Part shown: positions 1-60,715 of the stretch, piece by piece | Numbering within the stretch: the first letter of the stretch is position 1 | Layout of the letters: every line of letters begins with the position of its first letter | Origin: Gracilinanus agilis | Taxonomy: Eukaryota | NCBI RefSeq assembly: GCF_016433145.1 | Contig: NC_058130.1 | Coordinates: 350,951,010-351,015,009, forward strand | Length of the DNA stretch: 64,000 nucleotides | Direction of reading: 5' to 3' | Made by a program: the position numbers and the translations under genes | The notes under the pieces: model-generated | Databases searched by the model: none | What the model saw: only the letters and a program-made list of their open reading frames with translations | Told to the model about the DNA's origin: nothing

Positions 1-1106
1 TGGGGGGGCTGCGGGGAGAGTTCAATGGGGGTGATTTGCAAAGACAACATTTCAGAGTGATAGATTGGGTGAATTGAAGGCATCTCTCTTTCTGCCAAGC
101 CAGTCCATTCTCTAAAGCCCCTAGCAGTCAGGCTATAGGATTTTATTCTGGTTGCAGAATAACTCTGGTGTGGCTTTGCAAAGGGGTGGGGGGAGAGAAG
201 AGGGGTGGGCAAAAAAAAAAAAAAAGGCTGAGAGGAGAGAGAGGATACGTGAATCGTCCAGTGCAAACTCTATTGTTTGAAACTTACTTTATATCAGAAT
301 TTGAAGATGAAAACGGTAAGGAAGCCTTCACAATATTCAATGAAACTTTTTTCCTTGTGCTTTGCTTGTCTCCCGACTAACGCGTAGAGACCTTTTTTTC
401 CCCCTGTGTGCTTTTTTTTTTTTTTTTTTAATGGCAATGGGCGAGCTTGACTGAACTTTTACAGATAAAAATCTTTTGAAACTCCAAAACTAGTCGGGGG
501 TTGAAATGATTCTAGGACATCCAAATATTTTGTGATTCAAAGAATATCAAGTTGTTATATAAATATGTAATTTCATGAAGCATGATTATTTTAATTATGA
601 TTACCGGAGCTTTTGGATGGCTTATCATATAGTGGTCGGGAAAGATAAATGAGATGAGAGAACGTTTTGAAGTCATTTTCATTTTTCACAGAAATATTTC
701 AGCATAATATGGTTTCATGTCAGTGTCTTATGTAGCAGACAAGTGCATATTTTATGCCTGGGCGCAAAGGGCAGAATTAATATGATAGCTACAGTCCTGA
801 TGATCTAGGATAAGTTAAGCTCTTAATAGGCTAATCAAAGAGATGGAAGCGTGTGTTTTTGATTTACTTCTGGCCACTTGGGACGTGCTAGACTCATAAC
901 CCTACAGAGACTTATTTATCGGTGTGTGTCTGTGTATATATTGTGTGGTACGGAGTTCAAAGGGTTTTTTTCCCCCCTGGGTTTTATTGGAAACTCGCCT
1001 CCTGATGAAGTGTATGTACAAGCCCTGTCTTTGCTAATTTCTTTCATTGTTGAACTAGAGGCAAAGAGAGGGAGATAGGCAAAGATAGAGGAGGAGAGAA
1101 GGGGGC

Positions 1107-1108
<2 letters not shown>

Positions 1109-1176
<68 letters not shown>
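1109..1176. repeat. (GA)34 microsatellite
   Basis: Perfect GA dinucleotide run of 68 bp. Confidence 0.97.
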
Positions 1177-1182
<6 letters not shown>

Positions 1183-1377
1183 GGAGAGTGAGTTTCTTAG
1201 ACCCTTGTTTTTATTTGAGCTGCCGGTGCAACGCATTTGGGCCAAATGCCAACTGTCTGGGTCACACGCGTTTTATCCAAATAGATTTAGCGCTGCTGTC
1301 TGGAAATGGGCTGCTGAATGTTAACTTTAGGATCAACTCAACCAGAGCAGCTCAGACTGTTCCTCTCTGTCTCAGGA

Positions 1378-1417
1378 GGGGGTAGATGGTAGGGGGCATT
1401 ATAGGGGAGTAGGGGGG
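1378..1417 (+). other. Putative G-quadruplex motif
   Basis: GGGGG-tagatggta-GGGGG-cattata-GGGG-agta-GGGGGG. Confidence 0.55.
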
Positions 1418-4948: not shown

Positions 4949-5351
4949 CAACAGGGCCCCTGTATCCATGGGGGCTACCTGCTTCAGATAGCTGAAACTG
5001 TGGATATAAGCAAACACCTGCTGACNNNNNNNNNNNNNNNNNNNNNNNNNNNNNNNNNNNNNNNNNNNNNNNNNNNNNNNNNNNNNNNNNNNNNNNNNNN
5101 NNNNNNNNNNNNNNNNNNNNNNNNNNNNNNNNNNNNNNNNNNNNNNNNNNNNNNNNNNNNNNNNNNNTCTGCCCCTTGGATTCACAATCCACAGCCCCTC
5201 CCTGCCAAAAAAAAACTTTAAAAAAGTGAAAATGGAAGCAAGAGAGACTATTGCTGGGGGCAGACTGCTGCCATAAGACTCTAGCATTTCAGGTTGACTG
5301 CAGATAACTGAAACCACAGAAAGCAAAATCACAGATAAAGGGGCCCTGTTA
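4949..5351. mobile_element. TcMar-Tigger MITE (MER44/Tigger7-like), gap inside
   Basis: TA|CAACAGGGCCCC...GGGGCCCTGTTA|TA terminal inverted repeats with TA target duplication. Subterminal motifs resemble recalled MER44 ends with CpG decay. Confidence 0.7.
5026..5167. other. Assembly gap (142 N)
   Basis: Run of N. Confidence 1.
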
Positions 5352-8769: not shown

Positions 8770-9052
8770 GTACAAAAATGGCCCTATTTCTGCAACTACC
8801 CAGCTTAATGCCTTACTGATGAAAATTTTTACAACTTTATCTTTCTTTTTCATTTTGGATTGAAAAAACAATGAATCCAGAGAGAGGAGAAAGCACAGAA
8901 TGTTGGAAACGAGCACCTGCTAAAAAGTGGAATATCTAATCACTAATTTCCAATAGATAGCAAACAAAACTGTTATGCTGCGGTACTGGAGTGGTGTTAA
9001 TTCTCTAGCAAGTAGGTAGCCCTCCAACAACACATCCATTTTTTTCTAAATT
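8770..9052 (+). promoter_or_regulatory. ADAMTS6: ADAMTS6 exon 2 5'UTR portion (283 nt) with six upstream ATGs in five uORFs
   Basis: Acceptor ttttttttgggtattctag|G at 8769/8770. uORFs at 8778-8819 (second ATG at 8808), 8819-8863, 8871-8939, 8900-8923 and 8975-9019. Confidence 0.75.
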
Positions 9053-9149
9053 ATGGAAATTTTGTGGAAGACGTTGACCTGGATTTTGAGCCTCGTCATG
9101 GCTTCATCGGAATTTCACAGTGACACCAGGCTTTCATACCGCTCCCAAG
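9053..9149 (+). CDS. ADAMTS6: ADAMTS6 coding exon (exon 2): signal peptide [32 protein letters not shown], phase-1 end
   Basis: ATG at 9053, 97 nt, donor AAG|GTAGGG, matches the ADAMTS6 N-terminus. Confidence 0.95.
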
Positions 9150-9878
9150 GTAGGGTTCTTCCTTTTACAACTGGTGAGAGATTGTTACTCTTCAAGTGTG
9201 CAGTGCTGGGTGGGGGTGATTCTAGCTGAATGAAGAGTGTCTTGGGGAACATGGCCATTGAAGCTGAGCCCTCTTATGATTGGAGTTAAGTAAGGGGAAC
9301 AGACCCAGGCTCACCTATATAAGTTTTGTTTTTCTTTTTAAAGCAGATCATCTTTTTGTCAAGGGATATGTTATAAATGTAAACCCTTTATGGCAATCTT
9401 TCCTCCTCTTTTATTGTAAGTTGAACTTTTTTTAGTTCATAAGAGGGCTTTTCTGTTAAAGAAATTTTCAAATTCCCCATATGATAGAATTCCTATCTGG
9501 TATCATGAGGAAATTCAGAGTATTGAATAAATGTTCTCTCTAAGTCAAAGAAGACTTCCTATATAAAGAGCATCAAAATTATTAAGCCCCACTTTGCAGC
9601 ATTCACTAAAGATTAATTTTGGGACTTTATTATAATGTTTCTAGATGGTAGAAATGCCATTTTAGCTTTTAACTTTTTCTTAGTTCTCCCTGCCAGACTG
9701 GGCCCCTTCTTTCAGAGAGGACACATTGCCAGAGTTTGACAAAAAGCAGGAATCAATATATATGTGGGTACACATAATGAAACATATAATTATTTATTAG
9801 GTATATATGTACATATATTTATACACATACATGTATATTTATTTACATACAGACACATTTGTATAAATATGTATACAG

Positions 9879-10088
9879 AACCGTTATGCTGCGATTCTAG
9901 AGTGGTATTAATTCTCTAGTAATTAGGTAGTCCTCTCACAACACTTCGAGTTTTTTTTTTAAATTACGGAAATTTTGTTAAAGACTTGGACTTGGATCTT
10001 GAGCTTCGCCATAGTTTCATCAGAATTTCATGGTGACAACAGTCTTTCATACTTCTCCCAAGGGAAGGATCCTCCTTTTACAACTGGT
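9879..10088 (+). pseudogene. ADAMTS6: Degenerate tandem duplicate (pseudo-exon) of ADAMTS6 exon 2, copying about 8968-9175
   Basis: About 35 substitutions in about 210 nt by eye. Start ATG>ACG (9966), donor GT>GG (10063-10064), no frameshift in the coding part. Confidence 0.9.
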
Positions 10089-10106
10089 AAAATCCTCCTA
10101 GAATCA

Positions 10107-10116
10107 TACACACACA

Positions 10117-10165
<49 letters not shown>
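10107..10165. repeat. (CA)n microsatellite, one interruption
   Basis: Direct inspection. Confidence 0.95.
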
Positions 10166-10168
<3 letters not shown>

Positions 10169-11274
10169 TTCTTCCTTCTTGTAAAATCCTGGCAACGGGT
10201 CCTCTCCTAAAGAAGAGCACTCAGTCTGCCAGGGAGGATTCAGAAGAAGCTATGTTTTAGAAATGGAATCCCTACCTTCTGTATAGGTATACTATATACA
10301 CATATATGTACATATATGTACACACATGTGAATGTACATATGCACACACATGTATATGGAGAGAGAGAGAGAGAACGTCCCAAAAATCATTATGTATTTT
10401 TAAACTAACAAAGCTGAAAACTGCATTCAGACCTTTGGAACATTTGTATATGCCAATAATCAGTAGGCATGGGCCATGTGATTTACTAGATTTGAACCAG
10501 TAGAGCTGGATTTGTAGAACAGAACAGGGATGGATGGGTAAGATATTGGACTTCCAAAGCTCACTAGTGTTCAGCCTTTCATTGTTAGACAAGGACTGAC
10601 CAGTTTCTGGGACTGTAGGTCACCATCATGTTGGGAGGCAGGTCGATGAATTTATATTGTCTAGAGTCAGGAGACAAGGACAAGAAAGGACATCTTGATG
10701 CTCAGTACTCTGCTGAAAACTATTCTGTTCCCAGTCTCCAGGAATTTAAATCTAGGGATTAGAATCAGACAGAAGAGCACAAGTTATTGCCCAGAAGAAA
10801 CCTCTCCTTCATTTTTAGAGTACTTGGCTCTCTGTAAATCATAAAATAGATTTTCTTATTATGGAAGAGTCCTTTCAAGAGAGGCGAAAAGTAAAGTGAG
10901 TGTTACCAGGCTATATAGTTAAGGCTGCTAGTTTTATGCCTGAGGTGTGCTTTCCAAGTCTCTCTCTCTCTCTCTTTTTTTTAATCAGTTCAAATAGGGT
11001 AAACTCCATGACCTATGCTTGATGATTACTGGTAAGCAATGAACAAAATGTCACCTTGCTCTATGAACCAGTCTGATGCTGGTCGTTATAAAATGGCATG
11101 TTTTTTTTAATACTTGTTCCCAAGAGGATTCAGCAAGAAACAATCTTTCGGAAGATAGTGCTCTAAATTTTCAAGGGCTCTCCAGAGAAAAGCCAAGACT
11201 GAGATTTGTATGTACCAAATGTAACTCTTAGAAAGTAGCTAATGATAAGAATAATTCACATGGATGTAGCATTT

Positions 11275-11465
11275 TAAAATGGACAGAACACTTCCCTCAC
11301 AATCACCCTGTGAGGTAAGTGGGACAAATATCATTAACGCTATTTATAAATAAGAAAAAAGAGGCTCTGAGAGTGTCTCTCTATTTTAACAGCCAGGAAG
11401 GATTTGAGGTGAGATTCCCACCCAGGTCTGTGGACTTCAATTCCAACAATGCCTAGTCTGCCACT
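11275..11465 (-). mobile_element. MIR-family SINE
   Basis: cctcacaatcaccctgtgaggtaag...gaggctctgagag...ggatttgagg. Confidence 0.6.
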
Positions 11466-11949
11466 CTTAGAACTGTGGCTCTTAGCATATAGTTTGGTCT
11501 AGAGGAAATTATATTATCTCAGCCCCTTTCTCCTCTGTTTTCTTTTGGCTGTAGTTTCATGGGAATTTATACTCATAGGGGAACTTCCTTTTTTGGGGGG
11601 GGGCAGGTATTTGCATTCTCTTAGCCTAGCAAATGGGGGAGGGGTGGTGGCATTAGAGGGAAAGGTAAGGAAACTAAAGAACTACCATTTGGGAAATGTG
11701 GGTAAGGAACATGTAAATGGTGTGGTCTAGTTACTTTCTGGTAAGATGTTTTGGCTAACTTTTCAGGGCATTATTGCTTAAAACCTTGTTGGAGAACTCT
11801 CACACCAGCTCATTTTGTTTTTGGTTGCCCATGGGTTTATTGTAATTTTTGACTTTCATTTTGATGGAAAATTTTATGCACAAGGCAGAACTAGGTCCCC
11901 CAAATTCACTTCATACAACGTGGTAGAAATTGGGGTGGGAGAAATCCAT

Positions 11950-12195
11950 CCAGGGGTGTCCTGGAGCACCATATGGCTCATGAAAGCCAATCTTTAGATT
12001 TCCGATGAAAGCATTTACAGTTCAGAAATCGACAAGTGTTTGTTACATTGACTTAATTTATTTTTTGTTGATTATCTAGATTTTAAAAAGTGATGGAAAA
12101 ATGTTAATAATTCAGATTAAATTTCAAAAATGTGTCATGTAGACATTTTTTCTCAGAGATCTGACTGTTAACATAAATGTTTAACATACCCCTGA
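11950..12195. mobile_element. hAT (MER63-like) DNA transposon remnant
   Basis: ccaggggtgt... and ...atacccctga ends. The interior is homologous to 26410-26830. Confidence 0.55.
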
Positions 12196-12435
12196 ACTCT
12201 CCTACCTCAAATAAATATCATTTGGATAAGTTAAATGATTAGGGGCGTGTTCAACTTTCATCCATTTCCCCTTTTCTTTTATTTTACTAAGTGATTTGTT
12301 TACTGGTACCTCACTCCCTTATGCTGGGTGAGTAGGCTTAATAGTATGGCATTGTTTGTACTACTGCTTGGTTCTGTTCCATTTTCTTCTCTTTCATGCC
12401 CATCTCCTGGACTGTTCTACTTTGTGATTACAAAG

Positions 12436-12800
12436 AGGAATTCCTGTCATACCTTGAACACTACCAGCTCACCATCCCAATCAGGGTTGATCAAAATGGA
12501 GCTTTCCTCAGCTTTACTGTGAAAAATGACAAACACTCAAGGAGAAGGCGGAGTACGGACCCTGTTGACCCACAGCAGGCAGGATCTAAGTTATTTTTTA
12601 AACTCTCAGCCTATGGCAAGCACTTTCATTTAAACTTGACTCTCAACACAGATTTAGTGTCCAAATATTTTACCGTGGAATACTGGGGGAAAGATGGGCC
12701 CCAGTGGAAGCATGGTTTTTTAGACAACTGTCATTACACAGGATACTTACAAGATCAACACAGCACAACTAAAGTGGCTATAAGCAACTGCATCGGGTTG
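12436..12800 (+). CDS. ADAMTS6: ADAMTS6 exon 3 (prodomain, includes RRRR basic motif)
   Basis: aaag|AG GAA TTC ... GGG TTG|gtaagt; 365 nt; [15 protein letters not shown]...SNCIGL. Confidence 0.97.
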
Positions 12801-13659
12801 GTAAGTGTATGTGACATGTTTGTTTTCTGTTAGGAGAAAGAACACATTTATCCAGGAAAGAGTACACATTTTTTCCCCCACAGGGCTTTTAAAAGTAGTC
12901 ATTTCTTTTAAAAAAAAAAGAGTAGTCTGTTTTGCTATAATGGGACATGTACATTTCCAAAAAGCACTGTACTTTTGCACAATCATGCAAAATTGGACAA
13001 TAAAAATCATAGTTTAAGAAGATAATGGGGTCAGGGACACAATGAGGCTCCAGGCGGTTGCTTGGGCAGAGGGGGTCTATGGTGGTGTGAACCATCCCTT
13101 CTCAACCCTCGACCACTACTGCAACAGAAGATATACAACAAATAATGGTATTTTACCTGGACAAATATCTGAAGTTTGTTTGGGAAAGTGAGTGTTGGAG
13201 TAAGTACGTGTTACTGTGAAGTTTTCTGCCTTCATTTTTTTCATCATTTTTTCTCAAGAAAGAAATCAAGCAAAAGAGAAACTCATGTCATTCTCAAACA
13301 TATCATTTGATTTTGGAATAAATCTGCATTTTCAAAACACACATTCCATCAGAACTTGCTCCAATAAAAAGAATTGTATAGATAATTTAAAGGTAGGAGA
13401 AAATCTAAAAAAGTTATCTTTTCCACTCTTATTTTTATTGGGAATATTTTTGGAAAGGATTCCTTTCCCTAGAAAGAATGGCTTTTAAATTTTTGCATCA
13501 TACAGAATGAAACAAATAGTCTCCAGACTGGTTTGTCATCTGGGTTTCAGAGGGTCTCTGTTTTTGATTTGTCAGAAAGCTACCCTTCAAATATAAAGAA
13601 AACTGATTCAGGTGAGAAAGATTACTTTTTCTTGGGTCAGATTTTCTGTGAAAGAGCTT

Positions 13660-30682: not shown

Positions 30683-30813
30683 NNNNNNNNNNNNNNNNNN
30701 NNNNNNNNNNNNNNNNNNNNNNNNNNNNNNNNNNNNNNNNNNNNNNNNNNNNNNNNNNNNNNNNNNNNNNNNNNNNNNNNNNNNNNNNNNNNNNNNNNNN
30801 NNNNNNNNNNNNN
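30683..30813. other. Assembly gap (131 N)
   Basis: Run of N. Confidence 1.
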
Positions 30814-43745: not shown

Positions 43746-44009
43746 AACTTCTTTTTGATTTTAGAAAGTTCAGTACCATTTTTTAAAATAAACTTTTTTG
43801 AGGACACAAGCATTTTGAGAAATCCCAATTCCATTCAAGAATGCTTTATTTCCATGCTGTTCTCATCTCTCATCTCATTCCCCAAACCTTGAAGAACTTG
43901 AATATATTTAGTGGCCGTAAGAGAAGCATATCAACATGAAACAGCTGTATTTTAAAAGGCTTAACTAGTGAACTCATCTGAAGTGGTTAATTATTTTGAT
44001 TCCTAGAAG

Positions 44010-44224
44010 ACCTCCCAAGAAGCAGCAAACCTTGGTGGTTGAATGATACTTCTGCAATTCCAGCTTCCCTCCCAATTAATGACACTTTAAGTAGTCATCG
44101 TAGACAGAAGAGATCTGTCAGCACTGAGCGATTTGTGGAGACGTTGGTCGTGGCAGACAAAATGATGGTGGGCTACCATGGGCGCAAAGATATTGAACAT
44201 TACATTTTGAGTGTAATGAATATT
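44010..44224 (+). CDS. ADAMTS6: ADAMTS6 exon 5 (end of prodomain, furin site RQKR, start of the metalloprotease domain); alternative start 44007
   Basis: tcctag|aag|AC CTC ... AAT ATT|gtaagt; (D)[71 protein letters not shown]. Confidence 0.93.
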
Positions 44225-44921
44225 GTAAGTTTTATCCCTCTTTGTTTTCTTACTTCTTATTTGTTTTGGCTAGACAATTTTTAGTGAGGATTTTAAATCC
44301 CAAGTGAAGAAAATACTTCAGTAGACTAACACAAATTCAGTTTATTTCAAAATGAATTTACCAAGTCCCTACCATGTGCCAGATACTAGCAACACAAAGC
44401 CAAAAATGAAAGACTCTGTCCTTAAGGAACTTGTATTCTTCTGCTGATTAGAAAATGACTATTTTGTATTCTCCAAAAAGGAAATGAAGGGTGCCCCAGT
44501 TGTCCTTTTTCAGTTTCTGGAAAGTTTTGTGTGGCCTCTGCTCGATTATGTTTCAGCGTTTTTATTTTAAAGAGAACATCGGCTGAGAATGATTTTTTTT
44601 AATACTGTTTGTGAAGTTTTTGCACATCTTAAAGTGATAGGTGTAATGCTAGCTGTTATTATTATGGTCATGTTAAAAATTATACGTAGATAGTTAAATG
44701 TTATTGCTTAAGACCCCTGCAAAAATTTTATAGGAGAGAATTTCTTTAGGTGGATTATAAAAAGCACTTGCATCAAGATATTGTTGGATAGAGTTTTATT
44801 AGTTAGGTTAATACTGCTTTTTAGAAAGCTCTTTCAGATATACTTGGCACTACTAGTTAGCCTCCTGAAAAATTGTGATAAATCATAAAATTCTACACTT
44901 TTCTTTAAAACTGCCAATTGA

Positions 44922-45522: not shown

Positions 45523-45846
45523 NNNNNNNNNNNNNNNNNNNNNNNNNNNNNNNNNNNNNNNNNNNNNNNNNNNNNNNNNNNNNNNNNNNNNNNNNNNNNN
45601 NNNNNNNNNNNNNNNNNNNNNNNNNNNNNNNNNNNNNNNNNNNNNNNNNNNNNNNNNNNNNNNNNNNNNNNNNNNNNNNNNNNNNNNNNNNNNNNNNNNN
45701 NNNNNNNNNNNNNNNNNNNNNNNNNNNNNNNNNNNNNNNNNNNNNNNNNNNNNNNNNNNNNNNNNNNNNNNNNNNNNNNNNNNNNNNNNNNNNNNNNNNN
45801 NNNNNNNNNNNNNNNNNNNNNNNNNNNNNNNNNNNNNNNNNNNNNN
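45523..45846. other. Assembly gap (324 N), probably hiding ADAMTS6 exon 7
   Basis: The run of N is certain; the exon content is inferred (see findings). Confidence 0.9.
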
Positions 45847-51395: not shown

Positions 51396-53599
51396 TGACC
51401 TCGGGTACTTTAGTTCTGATTAGTCAGTTAACACTTCTGCCACAGTTTCCTCAACTGTATAAAGGAGATAATAATAGCACCTACTTTCCAGGGTTATTGT
51501 GAAGATAAACCAAAATTACATTTATAAAGCACTTAGCACACAATAGGTACTTAATAAATGCCTGTTCCCTTCCCTTTGTTCCTTTACCATCTTTTTCCTT
51601 ATCTTGGGTATTAACACCCTGTTATTTTTTTCAAAAAAAAAATTCAGAGTGAAGTTGACACTCCTTTATAACTCTTGACTTCTCATGGTATGCCTGACCC
51701 TTTAAAATTATTTAAACATAGGGATTATTTTTTTATAGTTGAGTTGTAAGGTTAATTCCCACTTTTTAAAAGAGCTCCCATAGACTAATCAACAAGTTAG
51801 AAAATTCTGAAAAGCTGCTAACTACTTAGCAAAGTAGTCAAGTAGCAGGTGGTTGCTGCTAACTAGCAATATTTATATAAGTGAAAAGCCTTTTGTTTCT
51901 CATTTATAGTAGAGCTAAGTTTTCTTTTCAGATGAGTTGATTAACAGATAGATGCATGTTTGGTATGTAGCTGAGCAGAGAAGAAGAATGCCTCAGCTTT
52001 TCTAGAAGGCAAAAACATGAATGCCTGAAAAAGAGTAGATCCCTAAAGGTGACTGGTTTCATGGAGTAATGACTTGGCTTTTATTTGCTGCAGTGGAAAA
52101 TCTACAGATTTTCATTGTTACACTGAGTAGTTGAACTGCTAGTAGGAAAAAAAAAAGTTTTCATGAGAAGATTTCTCCATAAAGTCAGAGTTAGTGAAAT
52201 AAATGAGAAAGGAAGATTATTTGTAAGCAGTTAAGAAAGAAATGCTTCTTCAATGAGTAGTAATGATATACTGAGTCTTGATTGAAGTTAGAAATAAAAA
52301 TAATAAAAAGTTAGAAATAAAATAATGGCCCCATTCTACTTATCATGGAGGAAAAATGAATTTTAATACTTTTGTTCTAGGGTTAGTTAACCTCCCTTTC
52401 CTCTATCCTTTTAAATCAATCATTTACCTTTCAACTGTAGGTCTCAGAAAGGGTCATAAAACCAATTCAAATGATAGTTTTTCCAGGAAATGTGTTTTAT
52501 AGTAATAGTTTGGGATCTGGTCTGTTAGAATATTCAGCTGCTATTTTGCTATGGAACCATAGACACTTCTGTAAGTAGAAAAGCTTTATTTTTGCCGTTT
52601 GTGGTTTGTAAGAAATGAACTTTGGAAACTGAAATTATACATGAGAAAATATTTGACAACTTAATTATCATGTATATTGTGCATGTACATATATATATAT
52701 ACATAAATTATGAAGAGAATTTTAACAAATTTCAACAATCATAGTTTTTTTAAGTTAGTATTAATGGTGTGGGTTATAATGACTTCTGAAAAGCATAGCT
52801 TTAGACAGTTTTGATTCTTGGAATACTTGATACAGTTAGACATATTAGCACATCTGAACATTATTAAGAAAACATGAATTTTCTAATGTGCAAGCATTTT
52901 GTCCCTTTGGGGTACCATAGAGACTTGGATTTGAAAAAATGATGCACATTTTTTTTTGTATTTGACTTCTGATTTTTTAATTTAATGCTTGGCCCTAACT
53001 AAGGCTAGATCATCACTGGCACCAATTTCAAAAATTCATTCTGCTTATTAAGTGATTAGTACTGCCTGTAGATGAGCTAGCTGGCTGGCAGTCCGAGTTG
53101 TGTGCCTAGCAAGGTCAAAGCTAAGAAGTGACCCTTAGCAGGAATTGTCGGGACTTTTTCTAATCAATAGCAGGTGTGAATATGGCTGAAGGAATATCAG
53201 AGAGAGTCTTGTTAGAAATGAGCTTATCACTACAATGGCTCCCTTGTGGAATAATGAATTTGAAGGCAGAATAAAAATGTGTTTTGTCTCCAATCGAAAG
53301 CTAGATAAAGTGTTACTTTGTTTTGTCAAAAGGTTCAAAATGGCACATAAGTTATTATTTCAAGATTTTGGACAATGGGAGGCAATTGTTCCTAATTATA
53401 TAAATATGGTGAGTTCAGGATAATCAACTTAAGGAGCCAATAATGAACCTGGCAAGATTGAACTTGTATAAAAATATTTAAGATGATTTAAAATAAAAGA
53501 TGATATAGCTTTGTAATTTAAAAGACAAATGTGACAAAGAGATGTAAACATGGAAGCAATGACAATATCATACCTTATAAAGCATGACCACTTTGTTCA

Positions 53600-56500
53600 A
53601 TAAGCATTTATTATGCCCCCAAATATGTGCCAAACTGTTCCGGTAGAATGGGAGTAGGATGAAAAAATTAAAGTCCATGCCTTCTTGGAGCTTGCATTCA
53701 TTTTCTTGGAACATATAAATAAAAATATATGCCTAAGACATAGAAAGTAATGACTGGGAGCGGGTGATGGATGAGAATAAGCCTCATATAGAAGGTAGTA
53801 AATAAATTGAACACTAAAGGAGGCTAGGAATGAAGAGATAATGTATTGAAGGAATGGGTGGCAATCTCTGTAAAGGCTTGGTGAACAGCAGAGTGGTTGT
53901 TTTATGGGTAGTTAGAATTCTTGAGAGGCATCTAGGTGGAATAGTAGATAGAATACTGACCTGGAGTCAGCAAGCCAGCTCTTCCTGAGTTTAAATCTGG
54001 CATCAGACACTTACTAGTTGTGTGACCCTGGGCAAGTCACTTAACCCTGTTTGCCTCAGTTTCTTCATCTGTCAAAAGAACTGAAGAAAGAAATGGTGAA
54101 CCACTCCAGAATCTTTGCCAAGAAGACCCTGACTGAAGAGTCAGACCTAGCTGAAAATGACTAGACAACAACATTATTTCTTGCAGGCTAATAATATGTC
54201 CATTACCTGAAAAAGTAGACTGAATTTAGCTTATGAAGAGCTATAAAGGCTAAATAGAGGAGTTTGTATTTTATCCTGGTACATCAGGGAGCCACTGAAG
54301 CTTCTTGAGCAAGGACTAGCAAAGATTATCATTTTGACAGGTACATGGAGGTTATATTGAAGATGGAAGAGGAGAGGGAAATCAATTAAGAGGCTGTTGA
54401 AATAATCTAGGTGAGAGGTGATGAGGACCTGAATTAGTGGGGATTGTGTGTGAGTAGAAAGAAAGGAAGAGAGGAATAGACATAAGAGATATTATTGAAG
54501 TAAAATCCTCAAAAACTGAATGGATATTGGAGGGTGAGAGAGAAGAGAGGAAGAGTCACTGATCACTCTGAAGCTTCAGACTTATGGGATTGGAAGGAAA
54601 TTGGCCCTCAACCAAAATAGGAGAGATGGGAAAAAGTGGATTTTTTTTGTTAAAAATATAATTAATTCTAACTCAAGCACGTTGAATTTAAGAAGCTAAC
54701 TAGAGATCCAGTTGGAAATAATGGTCATATGGAACTGGAATTTAGGACAGAGAATAGAGTTGGACATATTCATTTGAGAGTCTTGTAGAGAGAGGGGGTA
54801 TTTAAATTGATAGGAACTGATGGTTACGCCTCTTTTCTCCACACAGTATGAGTCAAGGTCCTTTACTAATAAAGAAAAAGTGATATGGAAGCTTGAAGAG
54901 AGAAGAGAAAGTTTGGAGTTTGGCGATAGAGAGTGTACAAGAGTCAATTAAACAAAAGTAAAAGAATTGCTCTGCTGTAGTGGGAGTGATCCAGGATTGG
55001 GATTTGACAAAGGATGATGTTAAAGGACTTAGAAAAGGATAGTACAACATGAAATTATTTAATTATAGGGTCAAGATTGGGAAGGAAGAAAAAAGAACAG
55101 GAAGAATACTGGTACTCTAGACAGAAATAGGAAAGTTTAGAAAGTATGAATTTGAGCAGAAAGATAATGAGTTTTGTTTTGGACATGTTGAGTTTGAGAT
55201 GCCCATAGGACATCAAATTCGAAATGTTCACTAGGCAGTGGGTGATATGGGACTTGAACTCAGGGGAGAGACTGGAACTATAAATATATATATTTCTATA
55301 TGAAGATGTGTAACACTGGAAATCATTGGCGAGAAATGATAATTAAACTCATGGGAGCTGATGAACTCACTGAGAGTGTATAAGGAGAAAAAAAAGGGGG
55401 GGCGGTTCAAGATAGAGCCTTGGAGGACACTTAGAGTTAGTGAGCATAACATGAATGAAGATCCAGGAGATTGAGAAAGATGGTGAGACAAGAAGGAGAA
55501 GAACCATGAAAGAATACTGTGATGAAAACCCTCAGAGAAGAAAATATCCAGAAGGAGGTATTAGTTAACACTCTCACATACTGCAGAGCAAAAATGATGA
55601 GGATTATGAAAAAGTTATTAGATTTGATAATTAAGAGAGCGTTGATCACTTTGGAGAGAGCAGTTTCAGTTGAGTGATGATAATGGAAGACAATTTTCAA
55701 AGGGTTTAGAAGAGGGCGAGAGAAGATATAGTGGGGAACTATGAATGTAGATGACTTTTTCAGTTTAGTTGAGAGAGGAAGAAATGAGTTGATAGGGAGG
55801 GAGAGATGGCAGGAAGTAGTGATTATTTTTATGAGAATGGGGAAGATGGCTGTGTTTGTAGGTAACAGAAAGAATTAGTAGGTAGGGGGAGATTGAAGAT
55901 TAGAAAGTGAGAATGTATGACTTGAGGGGCATCTTGCTGAAGAATATGGAAAAGGATGTGATTAAAGGTACATGTAGAGGGGCTAGCCTTGGCAAAAAGG
56001 ACCACTCTTCTTCAGAGACTGGAGTTAAAGGAGAAAATGGTGTGGGATGATATCAGGAGGATATAATAATCACCAACAAGCATTTATTAAATGCTTAATA
56101 TGCCCCAGGCACTATGTGAAGTGCTAGAACTACAAATACAAGCAGAAAGAAAAACAGTTCGAGTCCTCAAAAAGCTTTTATCCTAATAGGGAAAGACAAT
56201 AAATAAAAAGAAGCTGAAAGGGGGAGATGAAGCCATCTAGTGATATGACATGATAAAGTCCAAAATGTAGCCTGTAGAGGAATGAGACATGGCTGACCTG
56301 GGTATTCTTTTAAAATAAAGACTCTTCGAGGAGTCATCCAAGCAGAAGGAGAGGCAGAAGGAGTGAAGGATGCATCTAAGGTGTGAATTCCAGGGCTGGA
56401 GTGAACTTCCTGGATGAAGAAGTTTCTGGGATATAGTAGAGAAGAGGAATGAGGCTGTATAATGAGGAGAATGGGAGAAGCATCTTGCATTGAATGGCCT

Positions 56501-56620
56501 GGATTTTTTTAGGCAGAATGAGTGGAGGTCTTTAGCTGGGGGTAGAGGGAAAAAGAGAGGCTGGTATGGATGAATTGAGGGGAGAAGAGATTTGGGACAC
56601 CCTTGTATGTGAGAGGTATA
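53600..56620 (-). mobile_element. Long fragmented L2 remnant(s)
   Basis: Purine-rich; aataagcatttattatgcc, ttttggacatgttgagtttgagatgccc, tttggagagagcagtttcagttgagtgatg, agcatttattaaatgc. Confidence 0.7.
53930..54165 (+). mobile_element. MAR1-like SINE inserted in the L2
   Basis: gcatctaggtggaatagtagatagaatactgacctggagtc...ccactccagaatctttgccaagaagaccc. Confidence 0.85.
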
Positions 56621-57154
56621 AAGAAGTAGACAGGGCAAGTAAATATCAACCTCCATCGCTCCCTCCATTCCCATTTTACATGTGAAGAATCTGAGTTGTG
56701 GAGGGATTATATGACTCGTCCAAGACCACACAGCAAATAAGTGGTAGAAGAGTGGCTAAATTGAAGCTCTGTTGTCTCTGAATCTTCCCTTTGTACTCGA
56801 TGTTGGCTAGCCTTTTTGGAAGTATCGTATTCAGTTTTGGAGCCCATGGTGTGGAGTGAACAAATATTTAACAGTTCAGGACATTTTTTTTTCCAGTGCT
56901 GGGGAAGAAGATAAAAAGAAATGCTTCTTGTCCTCAGAGAGCTTCTATTCTACTTTATTGTTTATGATTCTTTCAAAGACATTGGGTAACAGATTGTCTG
57001 AGGGAAAGGTTCTATGAACTGGATTAATTTAGCAAGGGACTGGTAAAGCTGATTGGAAAACTGCAAATATTTCAGGTATATGAAGGGATATTTTTATGAA
57101 TGAGGATTAAGTAAAGCGCTTCTTTCATTCTGCCAGTAGAATCTTGCTTCTTTT

Positions 57155-57480
57155 ATTTATTTATTTAAAAATTTTATTTATTTAGAATATTTTTCCATGT
57201 GTTATATGATTCATGATTTTTCGCACCCCTCTTCCCTCCTCCCTCCCGAATCCAACAAGGAGTTCTACTGGCTTATACATGTATCATTGTTCAAAACCTA
57301 TTTCTATGTTATCCATATTTGCAATAGAATGGTCATTTAAAGCCAAAAGCCCAATCATATCCCCATCGAACTATGTGACTTATCTTATGTTTTTCTTCTG
57401 CGTTTCTGCTCCCATAGTTCTTTCTCTGGATGTGGATAGTGTTCTTTCTCATAAGTTCTTCTGGGTTGTCCTGGATCATT
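57155..57480 (-). mobile_element. L1 3' end fragment
   Basis: tttagaatatttttccatg...gagttctactgg...tctggatgtggatagtgttctttctcataag. Confidence 0.8.
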
Positions 57481-57532
57481 AGAGTCTTACTTCTTGAAGG
57501 AGCAAATTGTTCTGTTTTTGTCTTTGTAATGA

Positions 57533-57895
57533 ACTTAAAAAATCCTTACCTTCTGTCTTAGTATCAGTTCTAAGACAGAAGAAGGGCAAGGGCTAAGCAA
57601 TTAAGATTAAGTGTTTTGGGGGGCAGCTGGGTAGCTCAGTGGATTGAGAGCTAGGCCTAGAGACAGGAGGTCCTAGGTTCAAATCTGGCCTCAGACACTT
57701 CCCAGCTGTGTGACCCTGGGCAAGTCACTTGACCCCCATTGCCTACCCTTATCACTCTTCCACCTATAAGTCAATACACAGAAGTTAAGGGTTTAAAATA
57801 AAAAAAAAGATTAAGTGTTTTGCTCAGGGTCACACAACTCAGAAGTATCTAAGGTCTGATTTGAACCCAGATTCTGGCACTCTGTCCACTGGTAA
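57533..57895 (-). mobile_element. Older SINE interrupted by a younger SINE
   Basis: aatccttaccttctgtc...[insert]...ctcagggtcacacaactcagaagtatct. Confidence 0.75.
57619..57806 (+). mobile_element. Young SINE1_Mdo-like SINE with perfect 16-bp TSD
   Basis: TSD AAGATTAAGTGTTTTG at 57603-57618 and 57807-57822; polyA tail. Confidence 0.92.
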
Positions 57896-57999
57896 TAAAC
57901 TTTTATTGAATTAAATAGAATTCATAAGATAAGTCCAGAGGGAAGGGTTTGTGTGGTAGCAAAGAGGAATTGTTTTTTTTGGAAGAGAGAGGGAAGGAA

Positions 58000-58160
58000 T
58001 AAGTATTTTTATAGTATCTCCTATGGGCTAAGCACTTTTTGCAAATATTATCTCACTTGATCTTTGCAACAACTGGGTTAAGTGACTTGGGCAGGGTCAC
58101 ACATCTAGTAAGTGTCTGACACTGGATTTGAATTTAGTTCTTTCTGACTCCGGGCCCCAG
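58000..58160 (-). mobile_element. MIR/MAR core fragments
   Basis: ttatctcacttgatctttgcaacaac...ggttaagtgacttgggcagggtcacac. Confidence 0.6.
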
Positions 58161-59664: not shown

Positions 59665-59965
59665 TATAGTCAGTCTAGGCATTTATTAAGCTAATACCGT
59701 GTGTTAGACGTTAAGGACTGGGGATACGAATAAAGGCAGAAGATAGCTTCTGCCCTCTAGGAGCTCACAGTCTAATGAGTGAATACAGCATGAAAACAGC
59801 TCTGTACGAAAAAGCTATGGACAAGAGAAATTGGAGATAATCCACAAAACCATAGTAGTGAATTAGTTAACCCATTAAGTGGGTTCAGGAAAGTCTTCTT
59901 GTAGAAGATGAGATTTTAGCTGAGGTTTGAAGGAAGCCAGGGAAGCTTAAAGGTGAAGATGGAGA
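59665..59965 (-). mobile_element. L2 3' fragment
   Basis: agtcagtctaggcatttattaagc...gccctctaggagctcacagtctaatg. Confidence 0.7.
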
Positions 59966-59984
59966 GAATTCCAGGCATGTTCAA

Positions 59985-60715
59985 ACTCTGTCCCTCTCTC
60001 CCTCCTCCCTTCCCCCTCCCTGTCTCTGTCTCTGTCTCTCTTTCTCTCTTTCTCTCCTTCTCGCTTTCTCCCTTTCTCCTTCTCTCTCCATCTCTCTCCC
60101 TTTCTCTGACTCTCCTCTTTTTCTCCCTCTCTCTCCCTCTTACCCTCTCCTTCTCCCCACCCCCTTTCTCCTCCCTCTCCCTTTCTCTCTCCTCTCTCTT
60201 CCTTTCTCTCTCTCCCTGCCCCTCTCTGTCTCTGTCTTTGTCTCTGTCTCTGTCTCTCTCTTTCTCACTTNNNNNNNNNNNNNNNNNNNNNNNNNNNNNN
60301 NNNNNNNNNNNNNNNNNNNNNNNNNNNNNNNNNNNNNNNNNNNNNNNNNNNNNNNNNNNNNNNNNNNNNNNNNNNNNNNNNNNNNNNNNNNNNNNNNNNN
60401 NNNNNNNNNNNNNNNNNNNNNNNNNNNNNNNNNNNNNNNNNNNNNNNNNNNNNNNNNNNNNNNNNNNNNNNNNNNNNNNNNNNNNNNNNNNNNNNNNNNN
60501 NNNNNNNNNNNNNNNNNNNNNNNNNNNNNNNNNNNNNNNNNNNNNNNNNNNNNNNNNNNNNNNNNNNNNNNNNCATCTCTGTCTCCTCCCTCCCTCCTGT
60601 TCTCTCTGTCTCTCTCTGTCTCTCCCCCCCCCCCGTCCCTTTCTCCTCCCCCTTCTCCCATCCTCACCCATCCTCATCCCCCTTTCTGTCTCTTGCCATC
60701 TCCATCTCTTTCTGC
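59985..60715. repeat. Long (TC)/(TCTCTG)-rich polypyrimidine low-complexity tract containing a 303-N gap (60271-60573)
   Basis: Direct inspection. Confidence 0.9.

What the first reader, a model, noticed from the sequence alone, without database searches (positions are those of the whole stretch)
8968..10088. Tandem duplicate of the ADAMTS6 signal-peptide exon about 913 bp downstream, frame intact but start and donor lost
Seen: 9879-10088 aligns colinearly to 8968-9175, covering the last about 85 nt of 5'UTR, the 97-nt CDS and about 26 nt of intron. The copy reads TEILLKTWTWILSFAIVSSEFHGDNSLSYFSQG versus [32 protein letters not shown]. By eye there are 18 substitutions in the 97 coding nt (5 synonymous), no indel or stop, ATG>ACG at 9966 and donor GT>GG at 10063-10064. 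It includes intron sequence, so it is a DNA-level duplication, not a retrocopy. It is bracketed by TA/CA-rich low-complexity sequence (about 9765-9878) and (CA)n (10107-10165). Inference: an old lineage-specific exon duplication, most likely now a neutral pseudo-exon since the substitution pattern looks roughly neutral. I am not aware of such a copy in eutherian ADAMTS6.
Basis: partly seen in the sequence, partly recalled or inferred. Interest (0 to 1): 0.7.

Follow-up and report, generated by a model that had tools for sequence, protein, structure and literature searches.

The report
Decayed intronic copy of ADAMTS6 exon
The first coding exon of ADAMTS6 has an old, decayed second copy about 0.9 kb downstream in the next intron, inserted next to an inverted copy of nearby intron sequence; it looks like an ordinary neutral relic of DNA repair, not a working exon.

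Summary
Window 8964-9175 and 9875-10088 are colinear, same-strand copies, 82-83% identical (blastn E 1e-56). The only indel is 2 nt in the 5'UTR T-run. The 97 coding nt carry 18 substitutions, with no stop or indel. The start codon is ATG>ACG (9966-9968) and the donor is GT>GG (10063-10064).

- The copy shows 11 amino-acid changes. Simulation of 18 random substitutions expects 11.6 +/- 1.7.
- An open frame is expected 42% of the time.
- 9 of the 11 changes are on the copy's side when judged against a turtle ADAMTS6.

It is not a simple tandem duplication. Homology is limited to about 212 nt. The copy sits between two inverted 112-114-nt arms (9643-9754 and 10167-10280, 74% identical). Both sides also carry TA/CA-rich low-complexity tracts. 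The copy's right end runs into arm-like sequence. I read this as one local templated insertion (template switching). At assumed rates of 1-4e-9 per site per year, the divergence dates it to tens of millions of years ago.

Lineage range is therefore untested. Interest is low. The scan's index holds only this same note for this stretch.

The parts
8964..9175 (+). Copy A, the source segment. It comprises the last 89 nt of 5'UTR (8964-9052), the 97-nt CDS of the ADAMTS6 first coding exon (9053-9149, ATG 9053-9055), the donor GT at 9150-9151 and 26 nt of intron.
   Evidence: The peptide is 30/32 identical to the N-terminus of P0012, named ADAMTS6.
9875..10088 (+). Copy B, the degenerate duplicate (pseudo-exon), in the sense orientation inside the 3286-nt intron 9150-12435.
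   Evidence: 82-83% identity to copy A, E 1e-56. No homology in the flanks beyond these limits.
9966..9968 (+). Lost start codon (ACG where copy A has ATG).
10063..10064 (+). Lost splice donor (GG where copy A has GT).
9643..9754 (+). Left arm of the inverted repeat. It is resident intron sequence and the likely template of the right arm.
   Evidence: blastn gives 73.7% over 114 columns, E 3.9e-12, against 10280-10167. Alignment.
10167..10280 (-). Right arm of the inverted repeat, an inverted copy of 9643-9754.
   Evidence: K2P between the arms is 0.32. The predicted RNA duplex of the arms is -106.7 kcal/mol, against -35.8 +/- 5.3 for shuffles.
9765..9874 (.). TA/CA-rich low-complexity tract directly left of copy B.
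   Evidence: Only sub-threshold mir-297/466-type Rfam matches. It folds no better than shuffles.
10108..10165 (.). (CA)29 microsatellite between copy B and the right arm.
10288..10362 (.). Second TA/CA-rich low-complexity tract, directly right of the right arm. It is of the same kind as 9765-9874.
10087..10096 (+). Exact 10-mer at the right end of copy B that recurs at 10181-10190 inside the right arm. Here copy-A-like sequence passes into arm-like sequence.
12436..12800 (+). Next coding exon of the gene (propeptide). It fixes the gene identity and the intron that holds copy B.
   Evidence: Acceptor AG at 12434-12435 and donor GT at 12801-12802. Pfam PF01562, E 4.6e-24. The named hits are ADAMTS6.

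Best explanation
A 212-nt piece of DNA was copied once, long ago, into a TA/CA-rich low-complexity tract about 0.7 kb further down the same intron. The piece comprised the end of the 5'UTR, the 97-nt signal-peptide coding part of the ADAMTS6 first coding exon, and 26 nt of the following intron.

I infer that the same event also laid down an inverted copy of the 112 nt of intron lying just upstream of the insertion point. The present order is: left arm, low-complexity tract, exon copy, (CA)n, inverted right arm, low-complexity tract.

The most likely mechanism is replication- or repair-associated template switching (FoSTeS/MMBIR-type, or synthesis-dependent end joining with a fold-back step). 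Synthesis would have left the low-complexity tract, copied 8964-9175, and then switched to the opposite strand at 9754. A stretch there resembles the sequence just after the exon and could have helped the switch. Synthesis then returned to its original path.

The copy never had, or soon lost, what an exon needs. It has no ATG and no GT donor, and the acceptor of copy A was not copied so far as can be judged. Since then it has drifted neutrally.

Shown: the two copies, the inverted arms, the junction sequence, and the neutral substitution pattern. Inferred: a single event, its mechanism, and its age.
For: - The copies are real and far beyond chance.
- Homology is confined to about 212 nt. No flank homology appears in either orientation. 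This rules out a simple 912-nt tandem unit that is still intact.
- Inverted arms surround the copy, with E 4e-12.
- The arms' K2P is 0.32 (0.21-0.48), that is 0.16 per lineage. Copy A to copy B is 0.19 (0.13-0.27), with copy A constrained. The two values fit one age.
- The right end of copy B is chimeric. It follows copy A up to ...CTGGT and then follows the arm. The exact 10-mer occurs at 10087 and at 10181, and only once more, at 54500, on either strand of the window.
- The inner ends of both arms resemble the first 20 nt of the intron after copy A.
- Low-complexity tracts of the same kind lie on both sides of the insert.
- Neutrality: 11 amino-acid changes against 11.6 +/- 1.7 expected from 18 random substitutions. 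P(no stop) is 0.42. NG86 dN/dS is 0.44, but Fisher p is 0.18. Coding divergence (0.22) is not lower than non-coding divergence (0.17).
- 9 of the 11 amino-acid differences are derived in copy B, judged against P0012 (named ADAMTS6) and P0006 (unnamed, spliced ORF).
- Fold-back and templated insertions at breaks are documented processes (PMC11724301, PMC5728401, PMC2943611; found, abstracts only read).
Against: - No reads and no second species were examined. The arrangement rests on one assembly.
- After 16-26% divergence the junctions are blurred. The arm-like piece at the end of copy B is followed by 11 unassigned nt, the (CA)n, and then the arm again from its inner end. That needs a further slip or a later small duplication.
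- The confidence intervals on the ages are wide. Two separate events cannot be excluded.
- Whether the arm sequence is a dispersed repeat in this genome could not be tested.
- Expression was not examined. A role in RNA is therefore not excluded.
Confidence: 0.6

Rival explanations
1. A simple tandem duplication of a unit of about 912 nt (8964-9874). Most of the second unit was later remodelled by inversion, deletion and microsatellite growth, leaving only the exon part recognisable.
For: Same strand and close spacing of 911-913 nt. An inverted piece of the first unit lies in the place of the second unit.
Against: Outside the arms, no trace of 9176-9642 is found in 10089-10800 in either orientation. 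The arms themselves are still detectable at 74% identity, so comparable remnants should be visible. The model needs several later events where the templated-insertion model needs one.
Confidence: 0.15
2. The inverted arms are the terminal inverted repeats of a non-autonomous DNA transposon. It picked up the exon fragment (transduplication) and inserted into the intron, or the exon copy landed inside a resident palindromic element.
For: Inverted arms of 112-114 nt flank the copy. The arm ends begin with AG-A-GGTAG on both sides.
Against: No target-site duplication is seen at 9642/10282 (by eye). No other copy of the arm occurs in 64 kb. The captured fragment comes from only 0.7 kb away in the same orientation, which a local copying error explains more simply. 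The right end of copy B merges into arm sequence.
Confidence: 0.1
3. Copy B is kept for a function at the RNA level. It could be a poison or decoy exon (cryptic acceptor AG at 9876-9877, cryptic donor GT at 10087-10088). Alternatively it could be the loop of a long intronic double-stranded stem that influences splicing, editing or circular RNA formation.
For: The arms are predicted to pair (-106.7 kcal/mol; 92 pairs in the minimum-energy fold) and to loop out copy B. AG and GT dinucleotides stand at the edges. Inclusion of 9878-10086 would bring a stop after 7 further codons (local translation).
Against: There is no sign of constraint. Copy B has diverged as much as, or more than, the neutral expectation in its coding, UTR and intron parts. 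The canonical donor and the start codon are destroyed. The cryptic sites are weak by consensus. No expression data exist.
Confidence: 0.05
4. Assembly artefact: only one copy exists.
For: Low-complexity sequence on both sides is the kind of place where assemblies go wrong. No read check was possible.
Against: 17% divergence with a transition-rich spectrum is not what a mis-assembly yields. 96% of the sampled 31-mers of 8900-10300, which include both copies, stand in read-derived contigs of run X1.
Confidence: 0.02

Closest known systems
Tandem exon duplications and their silent intronic relics (the source of mutually exclusive exons; Letunic, Copley and Bork 2002 from my own knowledge; Hatje et al. 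2017, PMC5740500, listed and not read)
   Same: A second copy of an exon lies in the adjacent intron, on the same strand, with the same length and phase (97 nt, no indel).
   Different: The copy has no working donor and no start codon. The first coding exon cannot be swapped in a mutually exclusive way without its ATG. Only 212 nt were copied, and an inverted copy of intron came with them.
Templated insertions and fold-back inverted duplications from template switching (FoSTeS/MMBIR; SD-MMEJ snap-back synthesis; PMC11724301, PMC5728401, PMC2943611)
   Same: Both templates lie within 1 kb of the insertion point. One piece is an inverted copy of the sequence directly beside the break. There is short identity and homeology at a junction. 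The insertion sits in low-complexity DNA prone to forming structures.
   Different: The pieces here (212 and 112 nt) are longer than the 5-34 nt inverted insertions described in yeast (PMC11724301 abstract). The event is ancient, so the junctions are eroded and the mechanism is inferred, not observed.
Gene-fragment capture by DNA transposons (Pack-MULE or hAT-type transduplication; my own knowledge)
   Same: A gene fragment lies between inverted repeats.
   Different: No target-site duplication, no further copies in the window, and a donor sequence only 0.7 kb away in the same intron.
Processed retrocopy, or pseudogene derived from a circular RNA
   Same: A lone copy of exon sequence away from its place. 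Its right limit falls at a GT that could be an in-frame alternative donor of copy A (9174-9175).
   Different: It contains sequence beyond the canonical donor. It has no joined neighbouring exons, no poly(A), and no permuted order.

Membership tests
ADAMTS6 first coding (signal-peptide) exon, for copy A | N-terminal peptide matches that of proteins named ADAMTS6 | tested here: met
   30/32 identical to the first 32 residues of P0012 (ADAMTS6, partial, Chelydra serpentina). P0012 was found through the next exon, not through this one.
ADAMTS6 first coding (signal-peptide) exon, for copy A | Followed in the same strand and phase by the propeptide exon of the same gene | tested here: met
   Exon 12436-12800 gives PF01562 at E 4.6e-24. 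Phase 1 at both edges completes a GAG codon. The named hits are ADAMTS6/ATS6.
Working alternative exon from tandem exon duplication (mutually exclusive exon) | Same length and reading phase as its neighbour | tested here: met
   97 nt versus 97 nt, no indel, no stop.
Working alternative exon from tandem exon duplication (mutually exclusive exon) | Intact splice sites (and, for a first coding exon, a start codon) | tested here: not met
   Donor GG at 10063-10064 and ACG at 9966-9968. Homology starts at 8964 or later, so the acceptor region of copy A was not visibly copied.
Working alternative exon from tandem exon duplication (mutually exclusive exon) | Purifying selection on the copy | tested here: not met
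   11 amino-acid changes against 11.6 +/- 1.7 expected under random substitution. Fisher p is 0.18. Coding K2P is 0.22 against 0.17 for non-coding.
Working alternative exon from tandem exon duplication (mutually exclusive exon) | Seen in transcripts | not testable with these tools
Processed retrocopy | Exon-exon joins, poly(A) tail, no intron sequence | tested here: not met
   26 nt past the canonical donor are copied. There is no exon-3 sequence next to it and no A-run.
TIR DNA transposon carrying a captured fragment | Terminal inverted repeats | tested here: inconclusive
   Inverted arms are present at 74% identity. It cannot be shown that they are the termini of a mobile unit.
TIR DNA transposon carrying a captured fragment | Target-site duplication at the outer ends | tested here: not met
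   The 8 nt outside the arms share 3-4 of 8 positions, and there is no TA/TA (read).
TIR DNA transposon carrying a captured fragment | Further copies in the genome | not testable with these tools
   None in the 64-kb window.
Templated insertion by template switching (FoSTeS/MMBIR, SD-MMEJ) | Inserted pieces copied from nearby templates, one of them inverted and adjacent to its template | tested here: met
   The templates are 8964-9175 (direct, 0.7 kb away) and 9643-9754 (inverted, 0.1 kb from the insert).
Templated insertion by template switching (FoSTeS/MMBIR, SD-MMEJ) | Microhomology or homeology at the switch points | tested here: inconclusive
   The 10-mer is shared by the end of copy B and the right arm. 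The arm's inner ends resemble the intron start after copy A. The left junction is buried in low-complexity sequence.
Templated insertion by template switching (FoSTeS/MMBIR, SD-MMEJ) | All pieces of one age | tested here: inconclusive
   0.16 per lineage for the arms, against 0.19 for A-B with copy A constrained. The values are compatible, but the intervals are wide.

The most novel reading that the evidence does not exclude
The exon copy, held in the loop of a roughly 112-bp intronic RNA stem formed by the inverted arms, is a regulatory module of ADAMTS6. It could act as a decoy or poison exon, using AG 9876-9877 and GT 10087-10088, with a stop soon after entry. Or the stem could be a double-stranded RNA structure that tunes removal of the first coding intron, editing, or back-splicing.
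Probability: 0.05. Interest if true: 0.5.

Novelty: new member of a known kind. Interest (0 to 1): 0.22.

Why it matters
It matters little for ADAMTS6 biology, because the copy looks dead. It has two modest uses.

First, it is a rare-genomic-change marker. A 400-nt composite insert with sharp limits is easy to score as present or absent in relatives.

Second, it is a clean natural example of how exon duplicates arise: by local template switching into low-complexity DNA, not by unequal crossing-over. The inverted companion piece is still readable.

Annotators should also know of it. Protein-to-genome aligners could place the signal-peptide exon on the wrong copy.

Tried and rejected
They were used only in local alignment and scripts.

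2. Relatives' DNA. I searched with the ORF around the next exon, hoping to fetch neighbouring intron from relatives. P0001 looked human-like or primate-like to me, and I did nothing further with it.

3. I did not send copy B to the large protein search. Its ORFs are short and lack an ATG, so they are unlikely to be on record.

4. Flank homology beyond the 212 nt, direct or inverted: none.

5. Known RNA families and tRNA-derived repeats in 9200-11000. Only sub-threshold mir-297/466-type matches appeared, on the TA/CA tracts (best 41.5 bits against a gathering score of 90). No tRNA was found. These are rejected as compositional. The tracts fold no better than shuffles.

6. dN/dS as evidence of constraint. 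The NG86 value of 0.44 rests on 6 and 12 changes and is not significant. The simulation shows no deficit of amino-acid changes.

7. Literature. No paper links ADAMTS6 with an exon duplication of this kind. One further search failed on a syntax rule.

Exons were searched singly by reference. A joined reading of exon, copy B and next exon was translated only locally.

Full report
WHAT IS THERE

Window 8964-9175 and 9875-10088 are two same-strand, colinear copies. MAFFT finds 35 substitutions in 208 aligned sites and a single 2-nt indel in the T-run of the 5'UTR. blastn gives 82.2% over 214 columns, E 1.2e-56. The spacing is 911-913 nt.

Copy A holds an ATG at 9053 and 97 coding nt up to 9149, followed by GT at 9150-9151. 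Copy B reads through in the same frame. It has 18 substitutions, 12 transitions and 6 transversions. Five codons are changed only synonymously, and there is no stop or indel. B has ACG at 9966-9968 and GG at 10063-10064. The TA/CA-rich tract and the (CA)29 at 10108-10165 are as described.

GENE IDENTITY

An open frame at 12345-12830 holds an exon at 12436-12800, with AG at 12434-12435 and GT at 12801-12802. It matches Pfam Pep_M12B_propep at E 4.6e-24. The phase fits: the last G of copy A plus AG gives GAG.

A protein search with this ORF returned named hits that are all ADAMTS6: Chelydra serpentina partial, Polyodon ATS6 and Salvelinus ADAMTS6-like. The Chelydra entry (P0012) also carries the N-terminus. 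Copy A is 30/32 identical to it and copy B 22/32. Copy A is therefore the ADAMTS6 first coding exon. Copy B lies in the 3286-nt intron that follows it, in the sense orientation.

No hit exceeded 90% identity, and none shared the window's private residues. No close relative was found, and the taxon of the window was not established.

IS THE COPY UNDER SELECTION?

No sign of it.
- Of the 11 amino-acid differences, 9 are derived in B, 1 is derived in A, and 1 is unclear. This is judged against two outgroup N-termini, P0012 (named ADAMTS6) and P0006 (an unnamed spliced ORF).
- Eighteen random substitutions placed on copy A give 11.6 +/- 1.7 amino-acid changes. The observed number is 11.
- The frame stays open in 42% of such trials, so the open frame says nothing.
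- Nei-Gojobori dN/dS is 0.44, but on 6 and 12 changes only (Fisher p 0.18). That method also overstates dS when transitions dominate.
- K2P divergence is 0.22 in the coding part, and 0.17 in both the UTR and intron parts.

Homology stops sharply. Local alignments of the flanks, direct or inverted, score no better than shuffles. There is one exception: 9643-9754 matches 10280-10167 in inverted orientation, at 73.7% over 114 columns, E 3.9e-12.

The order along the strand is:
1. Left arm, 9643-9754.
2. TA/CA-rich tract, 9765-9874.
3. Copy B, 9875-10088.
4. 19 nt, then (CA)29, up to 10165.
5. Right arm (inverted), 10167-10280.
6. A second TA/CA-rich tract of the same kind, 10288-10362.

A four-way alignment of the junction shows that the right end of copy B follows copy A up to ...CTGGT and then follows the arm. 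The exact 10-mer at 10087-10096 recurs at 10181-10190 inside the right arm. It occurs only once more on either strand of the window, at 54500. The inner ends of both arms also resemble the first 20 nt of the intron after copy A.

MECHANISM (INFERRED)

The simplest account is one templated insertion into a low-complexity tract. Synthesis left the tract and copied 8964-9175 from 0.7 kb upstream. It then switched at a homeologous stretch to the opposite strand and copied 9754 back to 9643. Finally it returned, leaving low-complexity sequence on both sides.

The ages fit. The arms differ by K2P 0.32 (0.21-0.48), with both sides free to change. A and B differ by 0.19 (0.13-0.27), with A constrained.

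At neutral rates of 1 to 4e-9 per site per year (my assumption, from general knowledge of mammalian rates), the event is about 40-160 million years old by the arms. The figure is too rough to name a clade. It is old enough that the copy should be shared widely, not private to one species.

Fold-back and templated insertions at breaks are documented (PMC11724301, PMC5728401, PMC2943611, abstracts only).

One weakness remains. After the arm-like 8 nt at the end of B come 11 unassigned nt, the (CA)n, and then the arm again from its inner end. A further slip or a later small duplication must be assumed.

RIVALS

- A 912-nt tandem unit later remodelled. This is unlikely, because the arms are still detectable at 74% while nothing else of the unit is.
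- A transposon with inverted termini that captured the fragment. I saw no target-site duplication and no other copy in the window. Genome-wide copy number could not be tested.
- A retrocopy. This is excluded by the intron sequence and by the lack of joined exons. I do note that the homology ends exactly at a GT (CTG|GTGAGA, 9174) that would be an in-frame alternative donor of copy A.
- An RNA-level function. The arms are predicted to pair strongly: -106.7 kcal/mol against -35.8 +/- 5.3 for shuffles, with 92 pairs in the minimum-energy fold. This would loop out copy B. AG at 9876-9877 and GT at 10087-10088 could frame a 209-nt poison exon (local translation). Nothing indicates constraint, however, and no expression data could be had.
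- An assembly artefact. This is not credible at 17% divergence. Read-derived contigs of run X1 hold 96% of the sampled words.

LIMITS

I worked beside them.
- One protein hit (P0001) looked human-like or primate-like to me and was left alone.
- The claim of lineage specificity therefore remains untested.

VERDICT

This is a real, old, DNA-level partial exon duplicate that is now a neutral pseudo-exon. It was made by a complex local copying event. It is an ordinary kind of thing with a nicely readable origin. No paper in the library describes it.

Noticed in passing
window 9171-9179: A second GT (CTG|GTGAGA) lies 24 nt after the canonical donor of the real exon. It would be an in-frame alternative donor adding 8 codons. 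The A/B homology ends exactly there.
   Followed up: partly
window 8975-8977 and 9886-9888: An upstream ATG in the 5'UTR of the real exon opens a short ORF of 14 codons. It is retained in copy B, where the ORF is 4 codons.
   Followed up: no
window 8936-8961: A possible branch point (CTAAT) and AG dinucleotides at 8955-8956 and 8959-8960 lie just before the start of homology at 8964. If the exon starts here, the duplicated piece begins within a few nt of the exon edge. RNA data are needed.
   Followed up: no
window 12385-12435: The last 40-50 nt of the intron before the propeptide exon read as a peptide (…[12 protein letters not shown]). That peptide is recognisably shared by ORFs from other, probably sauropsid, sources (P0002, P0003, P0007). 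The acceptor-proximal intron stretch therefore seems deeply conserved.
   Followed up: no
window 44000-44281: A further ADAMTS6 exon region, holding the RQKRSVS furin-type site and the start of the catalytic domain. It aligns with spliced ORFs P0040 and P0041. There was no Pfam match at E 0.01 for this short piece.
   Followed up: partly
window 9804-9879 and 10288-10362: Sub-threshold Rfam matches to microsatellite-derived miRNA families (mir-297, mir-466, mir-3149). The best is 41.5 bits against a gathering score of 90. They occur on both strands of both TA/CA tracts and are taken as compositional.
   Followed up: yes
window 919-1382 and 59950-60264: Long GA/CT-type simple repeats, which read as RERE/SLSL ORFs.
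   Followed up: no
window 52001-58000: A strong positive GC skew, up to 0.42 at 54-56 kb, with long minus-strand open frames at 55058-56755. This may be a repeat or transposon remnant.
   Followed up: no
window 5026-5167, 30683-30813, 45523-45846, 60271-60573: Four runs of N, left as they are.
   Followed up: no
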